From contig NC_043022.1 in NCBI RefSeq assembly GCF_006345805.1, positions 4,526,001 through 4,590,000 of the forward strand: a stretch of 64,000 nucleotides of DNA, given 5' to 3'. Positions 30,467 through 36,345 of the stretch are shown here, piece after piece. The first letter of the stretch is position 1. Every line of letters starts with the position of its first letter. The notes beneath the pieces were generated by a model that made no database searches, was not told where the DNA came from, and worked only from the letters and a program-made list of their open reading frames with translations. A program made the translations under genes and the position numbers. The DNA comes from Octopus sinensis. Taxonomy: Eukaryota.

Positions 30467-33400
30467 GGTTGGCCATAAAATCGTGTCTTAGAATCAGTTC
30501 CTGTTGAAGCCAGACCAGAATGGTAAAATGGACATTAAGCAGATGAATGAAGGAAGTAAAATGGTCCGTAATAGTCGAAAGGCCATTAAACCCCAACCAC
30601 CATCACCAAAGGGGATGAAATGTCTGAAGGAAGATGACAAAAGCAACAGATGGTGTTCCATCTTCTATTTTCTGTTCAGCCTCAAATTGGGAGATGCAAG
30701 TGGGTTTGAGGGGTAGACTTGTCTTCCAAGAGGAGATAATGGTAACATCTCTCCCTCTCTCTCTTTCGGAGAGGCACAAGCACCTACACGCACATATACA
30801 CACACGGCAGTAACTTCCGCCTGCCGAATTCCATCACAAAGCTTCGGTCGACTCGGGGCTATAGTGGAAGACACCTACCCAAAGTGCCAGGCAGTGGGAC
30901 TGAACCCAAAACCATGTAGCGAGGACTCACTAAAAAAATGTTCTTGCTCTTCAGGAAAATGAAAAAAACAATAATCATGGTTGAATTTACAGTGTCCCGG
31001 GAGGACAAACTTGATCTTTCTCACCGGGTAAAGAAATTGTCATTTTAGGACTTGGTCAACAAGGCCCTTGTCTAGCGCTGGCATGCTGCCTTGTTCCCCA
31101 TCAGAGTCGGCTGTTTTGGCTTGCTATCTAGATCAGTGCACTATTTTCCTGCAGAAGATAAGCCTGAAACTCAAGTCAAGTGAAGAAAACCGTCAAGGTT
31201 AGCACAAGATGGATATGGCTGAGAAGAGACCACAGGTAGAAACCTTCCATAAGTGAAGACCCGCTCAGTCCTTGCTGCCTTACTCAAATGGGGCGAAATG
31301 CTTGTGACACTAGCACAAGATGGATATGGCTGAGAAGAGACCACAAGTAGAAACCTTCCATAAGTGAAGACCGCTCAGTCCTTGCTGCCTTACTCAAATG
31401 GGGCGAAATGCTTGTGACACTAGCACAAGATGGATATGGCTGAGAAGAGACCACAAGTAGAAACCTTCCATAAGTGAAGACCCGCTCAGTCCTTTGCTGC
31501 CTTACTCAATGGGGCGAAATGCTTGTGACACTAGCACAAGATGGATATGGCTGAGAAGAGACCACAAGTAGAAACCTTCCATAAGTGAAGACCCGCTCAG
31601 TCCTTTGCTGCCTTACTCAAATGGGGCGAAATGCTTGTGACACTAGCACAAGATGGATATGGCTGAGAAGAGACCACAAGTAGAAACCTTCCATAAGTGA
31701 AGACCCGCTCAGTCCTTTGCTGCCTTACTCAAATGGGGCGAAATGCTTGTGACACTAGCACAAGATGGATATGGCTGAGAAGAGACCACAAGTAGAAACC
31801 TTCCATAAGTGAAGACCCGCTCAGTCCTTTGCTGCCTTACTCAAATGGGGCGAAATGCTTGTGACACTAGCACAAGATGGATATGGCTGAGAAGAGACCA
31901 CAAGTAGAAACCTTCCATAAGTGAAGACCCGCTCAGTCCTTTGCTGCCTTACTCAAATGGGGCGAAATGCTTGTGACACTAGCACAAGATGGATATGGCT
32001 GAGAGAGACCACAAGTAGAAACCTTCCATAAGTGAAGACCCGCTCAGTCCTTGCTGCCTTACTCAAATGGGGCGAAATGCTTGTGACACTAGCACAAGAT
32101 GGATATGGCTGAGAAGAGACCACAAGTAGAAACCTTCCATAAGTGAAGACCCGCTCAGTCCTTTGCTGCCTTACTCAAATGGGGCGAAATGCTTGTGACA
32201 CTAGCACAAGATGGATATGGCTGAGAAGAGACCACAAGTAGAAACCTTCCATAAGTGAAGACCGCTCAGTCCTTTGCTGCCTTACTCAAATGGGGCGAAA
32301 TGCTTGTGACACTAGCACAAGATGGATATGGCTGAGAAGAGACCACAAGTAGAAACCTTCCATAAGTGAAGACCCGCTCAGTCCTTTGCTGCCTTACTCA
32401 AATGGGGCGAAATGCTTGTGACACTAGCACAAGATGGATATGGCTGAGAAGAGACCACAAGTAGAAACCTTCCATAAGTGAAGACCCGCTCAGTCCTTTG
32501 CTGCCTTACTCAAATGGGGCGAAATGCTTGTGACACTAGCACAAGATGGATATGGCTGAGAAGAGACCACAAGTAGAAACCTTCCATAAGTGAAGACCCG
32601 CTCAGTCCTTTGCTGCCTTACTCAAATGGGGCGAAATGCTTGTGACACTAGCACAAGATGGATATGGCTGAGAAGAGACCACAAGTAGAAACTTCCATAA
32701 GTGAAGACCCGCTCAGTCCTTGCTGCCTTACTCAAATGGGGCGAAATGCTTGTGACACTAGCACAAGATGGATATGGCTGAGAAGAGACCACAAGTAGAA
32801 ACCTTCCATAAGTGAAGACCCGCTCAGTCCTTTGCTGCCTTACTCAAATGGGGCGAAATGCTTGTGACACTAGCACAAGATGGATATGGCTGAGAAGAGA
32901 CCACAAGTAGAAACCTTCCATAAGTGAAGACCCGCTCAGTCCTTTGCTGCCTTACTCAAATGGGGCGAAATGCTTGTGACACTAGCACAAGATGGATATG
33001 GCTGAGAAGAGACCACAAGTAGAAACCTTCCATAAGTGAAGACCCGCTCAGTCCTTTGCAGCCTTACTCAATGGGGCGAAATGCTTGTGACACTAGCACA
33101 AGATGGATATGGCTGAGAAGAGACCACAAGTAGAAACCTTCCATAAGTGAAGACCCGCTCAGTCCTTTGCTGCCTTACTCAAATGGGGCGAAATGCTTGT
33201 GACACTAGCACAAGATGGATATGGCTGAGAAGAGACCACAAGTAGAAACCTTCCATAAGTGAAGACCCGCTCAGTCTTGCTGCCTTACTCAAATGGGGCG
33301 AAATGCTTGTGACACTAGCACAAGATGGATATGGCTGAGAAGAGACCACAAGTAGAAACCTTCCATAAGTGAAGACCCGCTCAGTCCTTTGCTGCCTTAC

Positions 33401-36345
33401 TCAAATGGGGCGAAATGCTTGTGACACTAGCACAAGATGGATATGGCTGAGAAGAGACCACAAGTAGAAACCTTCCATAAGTGAAGACCCGCTCAGTCCT
33501 TTGCTGCCTTACTCAAATGGGGCGAAATGCTTGTGACACTAGCACAAGATGGATATGGCTGAGAAGAGACCACAAGTAGAAACCTTCCATAAGTGAAGAC
33601 CCGCTCAGTCCTTTGCCTTACTCAAATGGGGCGAATGCTTGTGACACTAGCACAAGATGGATATGGCTGAGAAGAGACCACAAGTAGAAACCTTCCATAA
33701 GTGAAGACCCGCTCAGTCCTTTGCTGCCTTACTCAAATGGGGCGAAATGCTTGTGACACTAGCACAAGATGGATATGGCTGAGAAGAGACCACAAGTAGA
33801 AACCTTCCATAAGTGAAGACCCGCTCAGTCCTTTGCTGCTTACTCAAATGGGGCGAAATGCTTGTGACACTAGCACAAGATGGATATGGCTGAGAAGAGA
33901 CCACAAGTAGAAACCTTCCATAAGTGAAGACCCGCTCAGTCCTTTGCTGCCTTACTCAAATGGGGCGAAATGCTTGTGACACTAGCACAAGATGGATATG
34001 GCTGAGAAGAGACCACAAGTAGAAACCTTCCATAAGTGAAGACCCGCTCAGTCCTTTGCTGCCTTACTCAAATGGGGCGAAATGCTTGTGACACTAGCAC
34101 AAGATGGATATGGCTGAGAAGAGACCACAAGTAGAAACCTTCCATAAGTGAAGACCCGCTCTGTCCTTTGCTGCCTTACTCAAATGGGGCGAAATGCTTG
34201 TGACACTAGCACAAGATGGATATGGCTGAGAAGAGACCACAAGTAGAACCTTCCATAAGTGAAGACCCGCTCAGTCCTTTGCTGCCTTACTCAAATGGGG
34301 CGAAATGCTTGTGACACTAGCACAAGATGGATATGGCTGAGAAGAGACCACAAGTAGAAACCTTCCATAAGTGAAGACCCGCTCAGTCCTTTGCTGCCTT
34401 ACTCAAATGGGGCGAAATGCTTGTGACACTAGCACAAGATGGATATGGCTGAGAAGAGACCACAAGTAGAAACCTTCCATAAGTGAAGACCCGCTCAGTC
34501 CTTTGCTGCCTTACTCAAATGGGGCGAAATGCTTGTGACACTAGCACAAGATGGATATGGCTGAGAAGAGACCACAAGTAGAAACCTTCCATAAGTGAAG
34601 ACCCGCTCAGTCCTTTGCTGCCTTACTCAAATGGGGCGAAATGCTTGTGACACTAGCACAAGATGGATATGGCTGAGAGAGACCACAAGTAGAAACCTTC
34701 CATAAGTGAAGACCCGCTCAGTCTTTGCTGCCTTACTCAAATGGGGCGAAATGCTTGTGACACTAGCACAAGATGGATATGGCTGAGAAGAGACCACAAG
34801 TAGAAACTTCCATAAGTGAAGACCCGCTCAGTCCTTTGCTGCCTTACTCAAATGGGGCGAAATGCTTGTGACACTAGCACAAGATGGATATGGCTGAGAA
34901 GAGACCACAAGTAGAAACCTTCCATAAGTGAAGACCCGCTCAGTCCTTTGCTGCCTTACTCAAATGGGGCGAAATGCTTGTGACACTAGCACAAGATGGA
35001 TATGGCTGAGAAGAGACCACAAGTAGAAACCTTCCATAAGTGAAGACCCGCTCAGTCCTTTGCTGCCTTACTCAAATGGGGCGAAATGCTTGTGACACTA
35101 GCACAAGATGGATATGGCTGAGAAGAGACCACAAGTAGAAACCTTCCATAAGTGAAGACCCGCTCAGTCCTTTGCTGCCTTACTCAAATGGGGCGAAATG
35201 CTTGTGACACTAGCACAAGATGGATATGGCTGAGAAGAGACCACAAGTAGAAACCTTCCATAAGTGAAGACCCGCTCAGTCCTTTGCTGCCTTACTCAAA
35301 TGGGGCGAAATGCTTGTGACACTAGCACAAGATGGATATGGCTGAGAAGAGACCACAAGTAGAAACCTTCCATAAGTGAAGACCCGCTCAGTCCTTGCTG
35401 CCTTACTCAAATGGGGCGAAATGCTTGTGACACTAGCACAAGATGGATATGGCTGAGAAGAGACCACAAGTAGAAACCTTCCATAAGTGAAGACCCGCTC
35501 AGTCTTTGCTGCCTTACTCAAATGGGGCGAAATGCTTGTGACACTAGCACAAGATGGATATGGCTGAGAAGAGACCACAAGTAGAAACCTTCCATAAGTG
35601 AAGACCCGCTCAGTCCTTGCTGCCTTACTCAAATGGGGCGAAATGCTTGTGACACTAGCACAAGATGGATATGGCTGAGAAGAGACCACAAGTAGAAACC
35701 TTCCATAAGTGAAGACCCGCTCAGTCCTTGCTGCCTTACTCAAATGGGGCGAAATGCTTGTGACACTAGCACAAGATGGATATGGCTGAGAAGAGACCAC
35801 AAGTAGAAACCTTCCATAAGTGAAGACCCGCTCAGTCCTTGCTGCCTTACTCAAATGGGGCGAAATGCTTGTGACACTAGCACAAGATGGATATGGCTGA
35901 GAAGAGACCACAAGTAGAAACCTTCCATAAGTGAAGACCCGCTCAGTCCTTGCTGCCTTACTCAAATGGGGCGAAATGCTTGTGACACTAGCACAAGATG
36001 GATATGGCTGAGAAGAGACCACAAGTAGAAACCTTCCATAAGTGAAGACCCGCTCAGTCCTTGCTGCCTTACTCAAATGGGGCGAAATGCTTGTGACACT
36101 AGCACAAGATGGATATGGCTGAGAAGAGACCACAAGTAGAAACCTTCCATAAGTGAAGACCCGCTCAGTCCTTTGCTGCCTTACTCAAATGGGGCGAAAT
36201 GCTTGTGACACTAGCACAAGATGGATATGGCTGAGAAGAGACCACAAGTAGAAACCTTCCATAAGTGAAGACCCGCTCAGTCCTTGCTGCCTTACTCAAA
36301 TGGGGCGAAATGCTTGTGACACTGATCCACCTGCTGATGATAAGG
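30467..36345 (+). mobile_element. Degenerate Hero-like RLE non-LTR retrotransposon 3' portion, containing a satellite expansion
   Basis: Relic peptides NRVLES, SASNWEMQVGLRGRLVFQEEIMVTSL, IIMVEFTVSREDKL...FPIRVGCFG and STRWIWLRRDH* match my recollection of Hero-clade C-termini (DW.M.VDL, ELTVPWE, PVEVGCRG, SRWLWL.R). Interrupted by a SINE piece at about 30790-30920. Confidence 0.7.
31201..36323 (+). repeat. Tandem satellite, 46 units of 108-112 bp (mostly 111-112)
   Basis: Unit AGCACAAGATGGATATGGCTGAGAAGAGACCACAAGTAG...GGGGCGAAATGCTTGTGACACT. No spacers. Units differ almost only by 1-bp indels. Confidence 0.97.

What the first reader, a model, noticed from the sequence alone, without database searches (positions are those of the whole stretch)
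31201..36323. Satellite born in place from the stop codon and 3'UTR of a Hero-like retrotransposon
Seen: 46 near-identical 111-112-bp units. The single-copy DNA on the left is a decayed RLE ORF that runs straight into the unit. Each unit encodes the terminal STRWIWLRRDHK* plus about 70 nt of 3'UTR. After the last unit the 3'UTR continues (GATCCACCTGCTGATGA). Only unit 1 has CACAGG; the others have CACAAG. A CCTTG (111-bp) variant dominates units 38-44 and CCTTTG dominates the middle. Inference: a very recent expansion inside an old, degenerate element, with block-wise homogenisation. Both junctions to the progenitor are preserved, so this is a snapshot of satellite genesis.
Basis: partly seen in the sequence, partly recalled or inferred. 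Interest (0 to 1): 0.7.

Follow-up and report, generated by a model that had tools for sequence, protein, structure and literature searches.

The report
Tandem array born inside dead retrotransposon
A 111-112-bp piece of a dead retrotransposon, covering the end of its gene and the first part of its 3' tail, was copied about 46 times in place; this is a clean but ordinary example of how mobile-element debris seeds tandem repeats.

Summary
Window 31200-36323 is a head-to-tail array of 46 units of 108-112 bp, and 24 units are identical.

- **Left flank.** It is a decayed C-terminal restriction-like-endonuclease (RLE) domain of an RT-CCHC-RLE non-LTR retrotransposon. It runs collinearly into unit 1 (62.6-75.7 bits against a profile of real relatives).
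- **Right flank.** A covariance model was built only from the 3'UTRs of relatives in fish, amphioxus and limpet. Its single significant hit in the whole window is 36249-36379. That hit starts at the stop codon of the last unit and crosses the right junction.

So the array is an internal duplication of 13 codons, the stop codon and the first 72 nt of the structured 3'UTR. It was then amplified in place.

Caveats:
- "Hero" clade membership could not be tested.
- This is one 5.1-kb array, not a demonstrated genome-wide satellite.
- Most unit variants are one-base deletions with no insertions. That is a long-read error signature, so copy number and most variants need read support.
- Only the TT/TTT block is modestly non-random (p about 0.02).

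This is a known kind of event, comparable to the chicken CR1-derived HinfI satellite. Interest is modest.

The parts
30496..30753 (+). Upstream block of the retrotransposon remnant (the stretch before the RLE core, ending ...SNWEMQVGLRGRLVFQEEIMVTSL). It contains stop codons.
   Evidence: The family HMM matches here. Patella RLE ORF residues 73-101 align to 30667-30753. Adding this block raises the stitched-peptide score to 75.7 bits.
30760..30925 (-). SINE fragment with a CA-rich tail, inserted into the remnant. It splits the RLE domain where relatives have the RPD motif.
   Evidence: It aligns with 7 other copies of the same SINE family in the window. The protein match is interrupted exactly here.
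30941..31199 (+). Decayed RLE (PD-(D/E)XK-like) domain core, ...IIMVEFTVSREDK...RWHAALFPIRVGCFG..., with 2 in-frame stops and 2 frameshifts.
   Evidence: 29 bits against a 120-sequence HMM. 48 bits against profile A1. tblastn with RT+RLE proteins P0207, P0134, P0257 and others gives E down to 3e-8.
31200..36323 (+). Tandem array of 46 units of 108-112 bp. Each unit holds the last 13 codons, TAG, and 72 nt of 3'UTR.
31201..31239 (+). Coding tail of unit 1 (STRWIWLRRDHR*), collinear with the flank. It carries the unique G (CACAGG).
   Evidence: The tail adds about 14 bits and merges into one HMM domain covering profile positions 52-154 of 164. Patella residues 189-208 align to 31174-31233.
36249..36379 (+). 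The only complete copy of the family's structured 3'UTR element: the 3'UTR part of the last unit plus the right flank.
   Evidence: Covariance model R1, built from relatives only, scores 20.6 bits, E about 1e-3 over the whole window, full model 1-152. The next best hit is 13 bits. 21 of 24 aligned pairs are canonical.
36306..36340 (+). Motif pair CGAAAT-N22-CTGATGA, straddling the right junction (36323/36324).
   Evidence: It is the only match in the window, against 0.02 expected. The same pattern occurs once in each of six relatives' loci, in the 3'UTR wherever the ORF end was mapped.
36324..36379 (+). Single-copy remainder of the retrotransposon 3'UTR: CUGAUGAU, the 3' strand of closing helix P1 and a terminal hairpin. 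The inferred 3' end of the element is near 36379.
   Evidence: In Patella, similarity between two copies ends at L001 8753, one base past the model end at 8752.

Best explanation
**What it is.** An old copy of an RT-CCHC-RLE non-LTR retrotransposon (R2 superfamily, plausibly Hero clade) lies at about 30496-36379. No RT survives upstream, and a SINE has inserted into it.

**What happened.** A 111-bp internal segment of this copy was duplicated in tandem with essentially no microhomology (a single shared T). The segment runs from 13 codons before the stop to 72 nt into the structured 3'UTR element. The copies were then amplified to about 46 by unequal sister-chromatid exchange or replication slippage.

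**What follows.** The array is a by-product with no evident function. Each unit carries only the 5' half of the 3'UTR RNA element, and the 3' half exists once, downstream.

**Shown:** the array itself, collinearity with the element on both sides, sharp junctions, and near-identity of units.

**Inferred:** the recombination or slippage mechanism, the recency, and the lack of function.
For: **Array and homogeneity.** There are 3 substitutions in 5123 bp, and the edge units are as homogeneous as the core.

**Left side.**
- HMMs and proteins of real relatives match the flank and continue into unit 1.
- The relatives carry RVT_1, a CCHC zinc knuckle and this domain at the C-terminus, with no APE.
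- The best solved-structure match is the R2 protein.

**Right side.**
- The covariance model of the relatives' 3'UTR hits only 36249-36379, across the junction.
- Helix P1 pairs a strand present in every unit with a strand present only in the flank, 10 of 11 pairs.
- An independent motif with the same spacing occurs once, at the junction.

**Other support.**
- No degenerate units in the flanks.
- The unit is unique in the window.
- No known RNA family, no tRNA, no unusual fold.
- The SINE insertion, stops and frameshifts show the host element is old.
Against: - Concerted evolution can keep an old array homogeneous, so the first duplication may be older than it looks.
- Sequence-only tests of the right flank were not significant: the nhmmer profile and Patella-versus-window Smith-Waterman.
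- The covariance-model E-value is rough, and the model skipped its 62 interior positions in the window.
- The CGAAAY/CTGANGA motif was defined after I had seen the window.
- The deletion-only variant spectrum shows consensus errors, so copy number is unverified.
- No genome of the source species could be searched, so other loci carrying the unit cannot be excluded.
- A second LINE in the window also has 3' tandem repeats that start near its stop codon. This hints at a recurrent, possibly RT-linked, process.
Confidence: 0.8

Rival explanations
1. The tandem repeat is a feature of the retrotransposon family, or it arose at insertion through reverse-transcriptase template switching. On this view the array is as old as the copy and is kept uniform by concerted evolution.
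For: The RTE-like element at 55834-59015 is followed by 3.8 copies of a 325-bp repeat. Those units begin with sequence from its last codons. 3' tandem repeats therefore recur in this genome.
Against: - All 45 internal junctions are identical, the edge units are not diverged, and no degenerate units flank the array.
- None of the six relatives' loci shows a tandem repeat in this region (for L001; sequences).
- The unit does not end at the element's 3' terminus. That excludes end-to-end template jumping.
Confidence: 0.1
2. Assembly artefact: the real locus has one or a few units, and the assembler over-expanded them.
For: The variant spectrum is 26 deletions, 0 insertions and 3 substitutions, mostly in homopolymers. 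That is typical of an unpolished long-read consensus.
Against: - The ordered structure fits a real array better than a collapsed or expanded one. Unit 1 has a unique substitution, and the TT state is clustered in units 38-44 and present at both edges.
- Long-read assemblers usually span 5 kb.
- Without reads this cannot be tested.
Confidence: 0.05
3. A pre-existing satellite from elsewhere in the genome inserted into, or recombined with, a retrotransposon remnant.
For: None found, apart from the fact that the rest of the genome could not be searched.
Against: The unit is itself retrotransposon sequence, in the right order and register with both flanks. The ORF tail continues the left flank. 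The 3'UTR element is completed by the right flank.
Confidence: 0.01

Closest known systems
Chicken HinfI (SCR1) satellite derived from the CR1 LINE
   Same: The monomer consists of the 3'UTR plus the end of the last ORF of a non-LTR retrotransposon (review PMC9659126, table and section 2.2; PMC6947457, table).
   Different: That satellite is genome-wide and derives from an APE-type LINE. Here there is one 5.1-kb array in an RLE-type element, and both junctions to the progenitor copy are still in place.
Common cetacean satellite (L1 3' end), Drosophila 18HT (HeT-A/TART 3' region), Phodopus PROsat (L1 ORF2)
   Same: These are tandem repeats whose monomers are internal or 3' pieces of LINEs (PMC9659126).
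   Different: They are established, abundant and often centromeric satellites. Their progenitor locus is not preserved.
TE-derived minisatellites seeded by slippage or unequal crossing-over
   Same: The proposed mechanism is the same: an initial duplication by replication slippage or unequal exchange, followed by expansion (PMC6947457, section 3.1).
   Different: Those cases usually involve 5-10-bp flanking direct repeats. Here only 1 nt (T) is shared at the breakpoints.
HERO clade of RLE non-LTR retrotransposons (HEROFr, HEROTn, HERODr, HERO-1_BF, HERO-1_SP, HERO-1_HR)
   Same: Same domain order, a single ORF with RT, then CCHC, then a PD-(D/E)XK-like nuclease, and no APE. The host range of the relatives found here (teleosts including Takifugu, Branchiostoma, molluscs) overlaps that of named HERO elements (PMC3636483, PMC7650587). 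R2-Hero is reported mainly in cephalopods among molluscs (PMC10294476).
   Different: No RT phylogeny against reference HERO, NeSL, R2, R4 or CRE sequences could be made, and the window copy has no RT left.

Membership tests
RLE-type non-LTR retrotransposon (R2 superfamily) | C-terminal PD-(D/E)XK-like restriction-like endonuclease domain | tested here: met
   The window remnant scores 48-75.7 bits against profile A1 and 29 bits against the 120-sequence HMM. The PD motif itself is lost at the SINE insertion, and the copy is non-functional.
RLE-type non-LTR retrotransposon (R2 superfamily) | Reverse transcriptase upstream in the same ORF, with a CCHC knuckle between RT and RLE | tested here: inconclusive
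   Met in relatives: Patella L001 has RVT_1, then CCHC, then RLE. P0221, P0194 and P0134 have RVT_1 (plus zf-RVT) with this domain at the C-terminus. Not present in the window copy: no RT lies upstream of 30496, so the copy is 5'-truncated or eroded.
RLE-type non-LTR retrotransposon (R2 superfamily) | No apurinic/apyrimidinic endonuclease at the N-terminus | tested here: met
   Pfam finds no Exo_endo_phos domain in the 847-1130-aa relatives. Among solved structures the best hit is the R2 protein 9nl2.
HERO clade | Placement in the HERO clade by RT phylogeny against reference elements | not testable with these tools
   No Repbase or Dfam references are available and the window copy has no RT. 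Only host range and the literature support it (PMC3636483, PMC7650587, PMC10294476, PMC4640811).
Satellite DNA (strict sense) | Head-to-tail array of homogeneous monomers | tested here: met
Satellite DNA (strict sense) | High genomic abundance, or long or multiple arrays | not testable with these tools
   Only one 5.1-kb array is seen. There is no other copy in the window. Nothing was found in the protein, metagenome, viral or prokaryote collections, but none of these holds the source genome.
Hammerhead ribozyme (considered for the 3'UTR element because of invariant CUGANGA and CGAAAC) | Three-way junction with CUGANGA, GAAA and a 1-nt strand at the junction, plus a match to the Rfam hammerhead models | tested here: not met
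   No Rfam hit at E<=1 in the window region or in the relatives' loci L001-L003 and L005-L007. In the consensus structure the junction strands are AAG, 1 nt and CUGAUGA, and the GAAA lies inside another hairpin.

The most novel reading that the evidence does not exclude
The RT-RLE family has a deeply conserved structured 3'UTR RNA, shared from fish to amphioxus to molluscs, with invariant CUGANGA and CGAAAC and no Rfam family. It could be an undescribed functional RNA, either a docking element for the reverse transcriptase or a new self-cleaving motif. Its structure-forming DNA could also be what makes LINE 3' ends in this genome prone to tandem duplication. On that reading the array is one instance of a recurrent, structure-driven route to satellite birth.
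Probability: 0.12. Interest if true: 0.6.

Novelty: new member of a known kind. Interest (0 to 1): 0.3.

Why it matters
Most satellites derived from mobile elements are recognised only after they have spread, when the progenitor locus is gone. Here the progenitor copy, both breakpoints and a young array sit together. The breakpoints can be placed to the base against a conserved protein domain on one side and a conserved RNA structure on the other. That makes this a useful worked example, and a locus where copy-number polymorphism could be followed in populations. It does not change what is known about how satellites arise.

Tried and rejected
**Direct identification of the flank failed.**
- Pfam on the stitched flank peptide found nothing.
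- A word-indexed search with the same peptide found nothing.
- I therefore used a motif recalled from memory only as bait to fetch real proteins. All tests were then run with those real proteins.

**Copies of the unit elsewhere were not found.**
- Exact-protein look-ups of array and junction ORFs.
- A six-frame unit peptide query.
- Exact DNA scans of metagenome, viral and prokaryotic contigs.
- All were negative, but none of these collections holds the source genome.
- Look-ups of the RTE ORFs, meant to identify the species, also failed.

**Other tests that led nowhere or were rejected.**
- Unit versus the RTE 3' tail: no significant similarity.
- Sequence-only tests of the right flank (nhmmer, Smith-Waterman) were not significant. 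Only the structure-aware model and the spaced motif worked.
- Hammerhead ribozyme reading of the 3'UTR motif: rejected.
- The window copy of the 3'UTR does not fold better than shuffles (z = 0.31), as expected for a dead copy.
- 5S, snRNA or tRNA gene array: rejected.
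Full report
**1. The observation**

Tandem Repeats Finder reports one array at 31200-36323 with period 112, 46.0 copies and 98% matches. Splitting at the TAGCACA anchor gives 46 units of 108-112 bp, and 24 of them are the identical 112-mer.

Each unit is T + AGC ACA AGA TGG ATA TGG CTG AGA AGA GAC CAC AAG TAG (STRWIWLRRDHK*) followed by 72 nt.

- Unit 1 alone has CACAGG.
- The CCTTG state is in units 38 and 40-44. 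It also occurs in units 1, 2, 8, 14, 19 and 46.
- The array is followed by GATCCACCTGCTGATGA.

Against the 112-mer there are 3 substitutions, 26 deletion events and no insertions. The private deletions sit mostly in short base runs. This one-sided spectrum is what an incompletely polished long-read consensus produces. Most "variants" should therefore not be read as evolution, and the exact copy number needs read support.

The TT/TTT state is the exception. Its clustering is modestly non-random, with p = 0.017-0.020 by permutation. It is also the state of both edge units.

**2. The boundaries**

Both junctions are sharp. Neither flank contains degenerate units when Smith-Waterman scores are compared with shuffles. 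The unit has no other copy in the 64 kb.

The breakpoints share only one base: ...AAGGT|TAGCAC... on the left and ...GACAC|TGATCC... on the right.

The unit is not a known RNA gene. There is no Rfam hit at E<=1, no tRNA, and the fold z-score is -0.05.

**3. The left flank**

Direct searches with the decayed flank failed. I used a C-terminal motif recalled from memory only as bait. It retrieved 180 real proteins from fish, the limpet Patella and amphioxus.

An HMM of the 120 listed hits was searched against the six-frame window. It hits 30944-31141 at 29 bits and, upstream of a SINE, 30496-30753.

Relatives show the architecture of the family:
- In Patella (L001), an RVT_1 ORF is followed on the same strand by a CCHC knuckle and this domain.
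- A profile search of 1.84 billion representatives found 8472 members.
- The long ones (847-1130 aa) have RVT_1, in three of the six also zf-RVT, and this domain at the very C-terminus, with no APE.
- Among solved structures the best match is the R2 retrotransposon protein.

These long proteins hit the window at 30905-31174, with E down to 3e-8.

I stitched the window peptide across two frameshifts, with two stops kept as X. The flank alone scores 48 bits. Adding the short linking frame and the first 13 codons of unit 1 gives one continuous domain of 62.6 bits, covering profile positions 52-154 of 164. Adding the block upstream of the SINE gives 75.7 bits.

So the ORF does run straight into unit 1.

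The host copy is old. It has stops and frameshifts, and a SINE fragment inserted where relatives have the RPD motif. No RT lies upstream.

**4. The right flank**

The 3'UTRs of relatives share a structured element of about 150 nt. RNAalifold predicts 41 pairs, and 21 of them show compensatory changes. This holds up against column shuffles (0 of 500 reach the observed value) and against slid partners.

In Patella, two copies lose similarity one base after the end of this element. It is therefore the 3' terminus of the retrotransposon.

A covariance model was built from five relatives, without the window. It was run over the whole window with filters off:
- It has one significant hit, 36249-36379 (+), at 20.6 bits and E about 1e-3, matching the full model.
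- The next hit is AT-rich junk at 13 bits.
- The hit starts at the TAG of the last unit and crosses the junction at 36323/36324.
- In the window row, 21 of 24 aligned pairs are canonical.
- The closing helix pairs AACCUUCC.UA, present in every unit, with UA.GGAAGG.UU, present only in the flank. That is 10 of 11 pairs.

The model skipped its interior positions, so a second line of evidence is separate. The spaced motif CGAAAY-N22-24-CTGANGA occurs once in each of six relatives' loci, in the 3'UTR wherever the ORF end was mapped. It occurs once in the window, at 36306-36340 across the junction, against 0.02 expected.

Two honest caveats apply. I defined that motif after seeing the window. Sequence-only tests of the right flank (nhmmer, Smith-Waterman against Patella) were not significant.

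**5. Interpretation**

The array is an internal tandem duplication of a 111-bp segment of one dead retrotransposon copy. The segment consists of the last 13 codons, the stop codon and the 5' 72 nt of the 3'UTR element. It was amplified in place.

- Insertion of a foreign satellite is excluded by collinearity on both sides.
- End-to-end template jumping by the reverse transcriptase is excluded, because the unit does not end at the element's 3' terminus.
- Forty-five identical internal junctions mean one founding junction was multiplied. The inferred route is unequal sister-chromatid exchange or replication slippage.
- Near-identity of all units, including the two edge units, and the absence of degenerate flanking units point to a recent expansion. 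Concerted evolution means the first duplication could still be older.
- No function is indicated.

**6. Comparison with what is known**

Monomers made from LINE 3'UTRs and ORF ends are documented:
- the chicken HinfI/SCR1 satellite from CR1;
- the cetacean common satellite from L1;
- 18HT from HeT-A/TART;
- PROsat from L1 ORF2 (PMC9659126, PMC6947457).

What is less common here is that the progenitor copy and both breakpoints are intact.

The element is RLE-type. Named HERO elements occur in Fugu, Tetraodon, Danio, Branchiostoma, sea urchin and leech (PMC3636483, PMC7650587). R2-Hero is reported mainly in cephalopods among molluscs (PMC10294476). "Hero-like" is therefore plausible, but it was not tested.

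The source organism was not identified. A cephalopod is my inference from the repeat content only.

**7. Verdict**

It is a new member of a known kind, of modest interest (0.3).

The conserved 3'UTR RNA element of this retrotransposon family has no Rfam counterpart. It is the most interesting by-product of this work.

Noticed in passing
L001 8608-8752; L002 1831-1979; L003 4488-4632; L004 1826-1975; L005 1897-2049; L007 2052-2201; window 36249-36379: The RT-CCHC-RLE retrotransposon family has a conserved structured 3'-terminal RNA element of about 150 nt in fish, amphioxus and limpet. CUGANGA and CGAAAC are invariant at fixed spacing, and 21 of 41 pairs show compensatory changes. It has no Rfam match and is not a canonical hammerhead.
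   Followed up: partly
window 55834-60543: An RTE-like LINE (APE ORF 55834-56652, RT 57175-57846, C-terminal ORF 58389-59015) is followed at once by 3.8 copies of a 325-bp tandem repeat (59078-60343). Those units begin with sequence from the last codons of the ORF (GAAGACCCGGC...GACGTAGTCAGTCC). This is a second, older case of a LINE 3' end repeated across its stop codon.
   Followed up: partly
window 60294-60543; 3303-3612; 5447-5728; 24500-24636: The same 61-63-bp tandem module (…GGTGGCACATAAAAACACCATCCGAGCGTGGCCG…) recurs at several loci in both orientations. One occurrence is the tail of the RTE-like element.
   Followed up: no
window 14268-14594 (+): A second, different RLE-like remnant (…PDLVVVDKENRECQIIDFTVP…KIAKYQDLV…). 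It scores 16.5 bits against the family HMM and gives tblastn E down to 8e-7. No RT lies next to it.
   Followed up: partly
window 36496-36725; related copies 24071-24260 and 25245-25666: A piggyBac-type MITE, with CCCTTTAG...CTAAAGGG terminal inverted repeats flanked by TTAA on both sides. It lies 117 bp downstream of the inferred retrotransposon end.
   Followed up: partly
window 30300-30425, 30815-30920 and about 20 other sites: An abundant tRNA-like SINE family with an internal microsatellite. Copies are about 80% alike, and one fragment interrupts the retrotransposon remnant.
   Followed up: partly
window 31200-36323: All 26 length variants among the units are deletions and none are insertions, mostly in short base runs. 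This points to residual long-read consensus errors in this assembly, which may affect other repeats in the window.
   Followed up: yes
window 8948-9524; 12104-12418; 26227-26916; 19557-19816: Long GGT/TGG/ACC-type microsatellites and 18-bp repeats create spurious ORFs of 220-370 aa on both strands.
   Followed up: no
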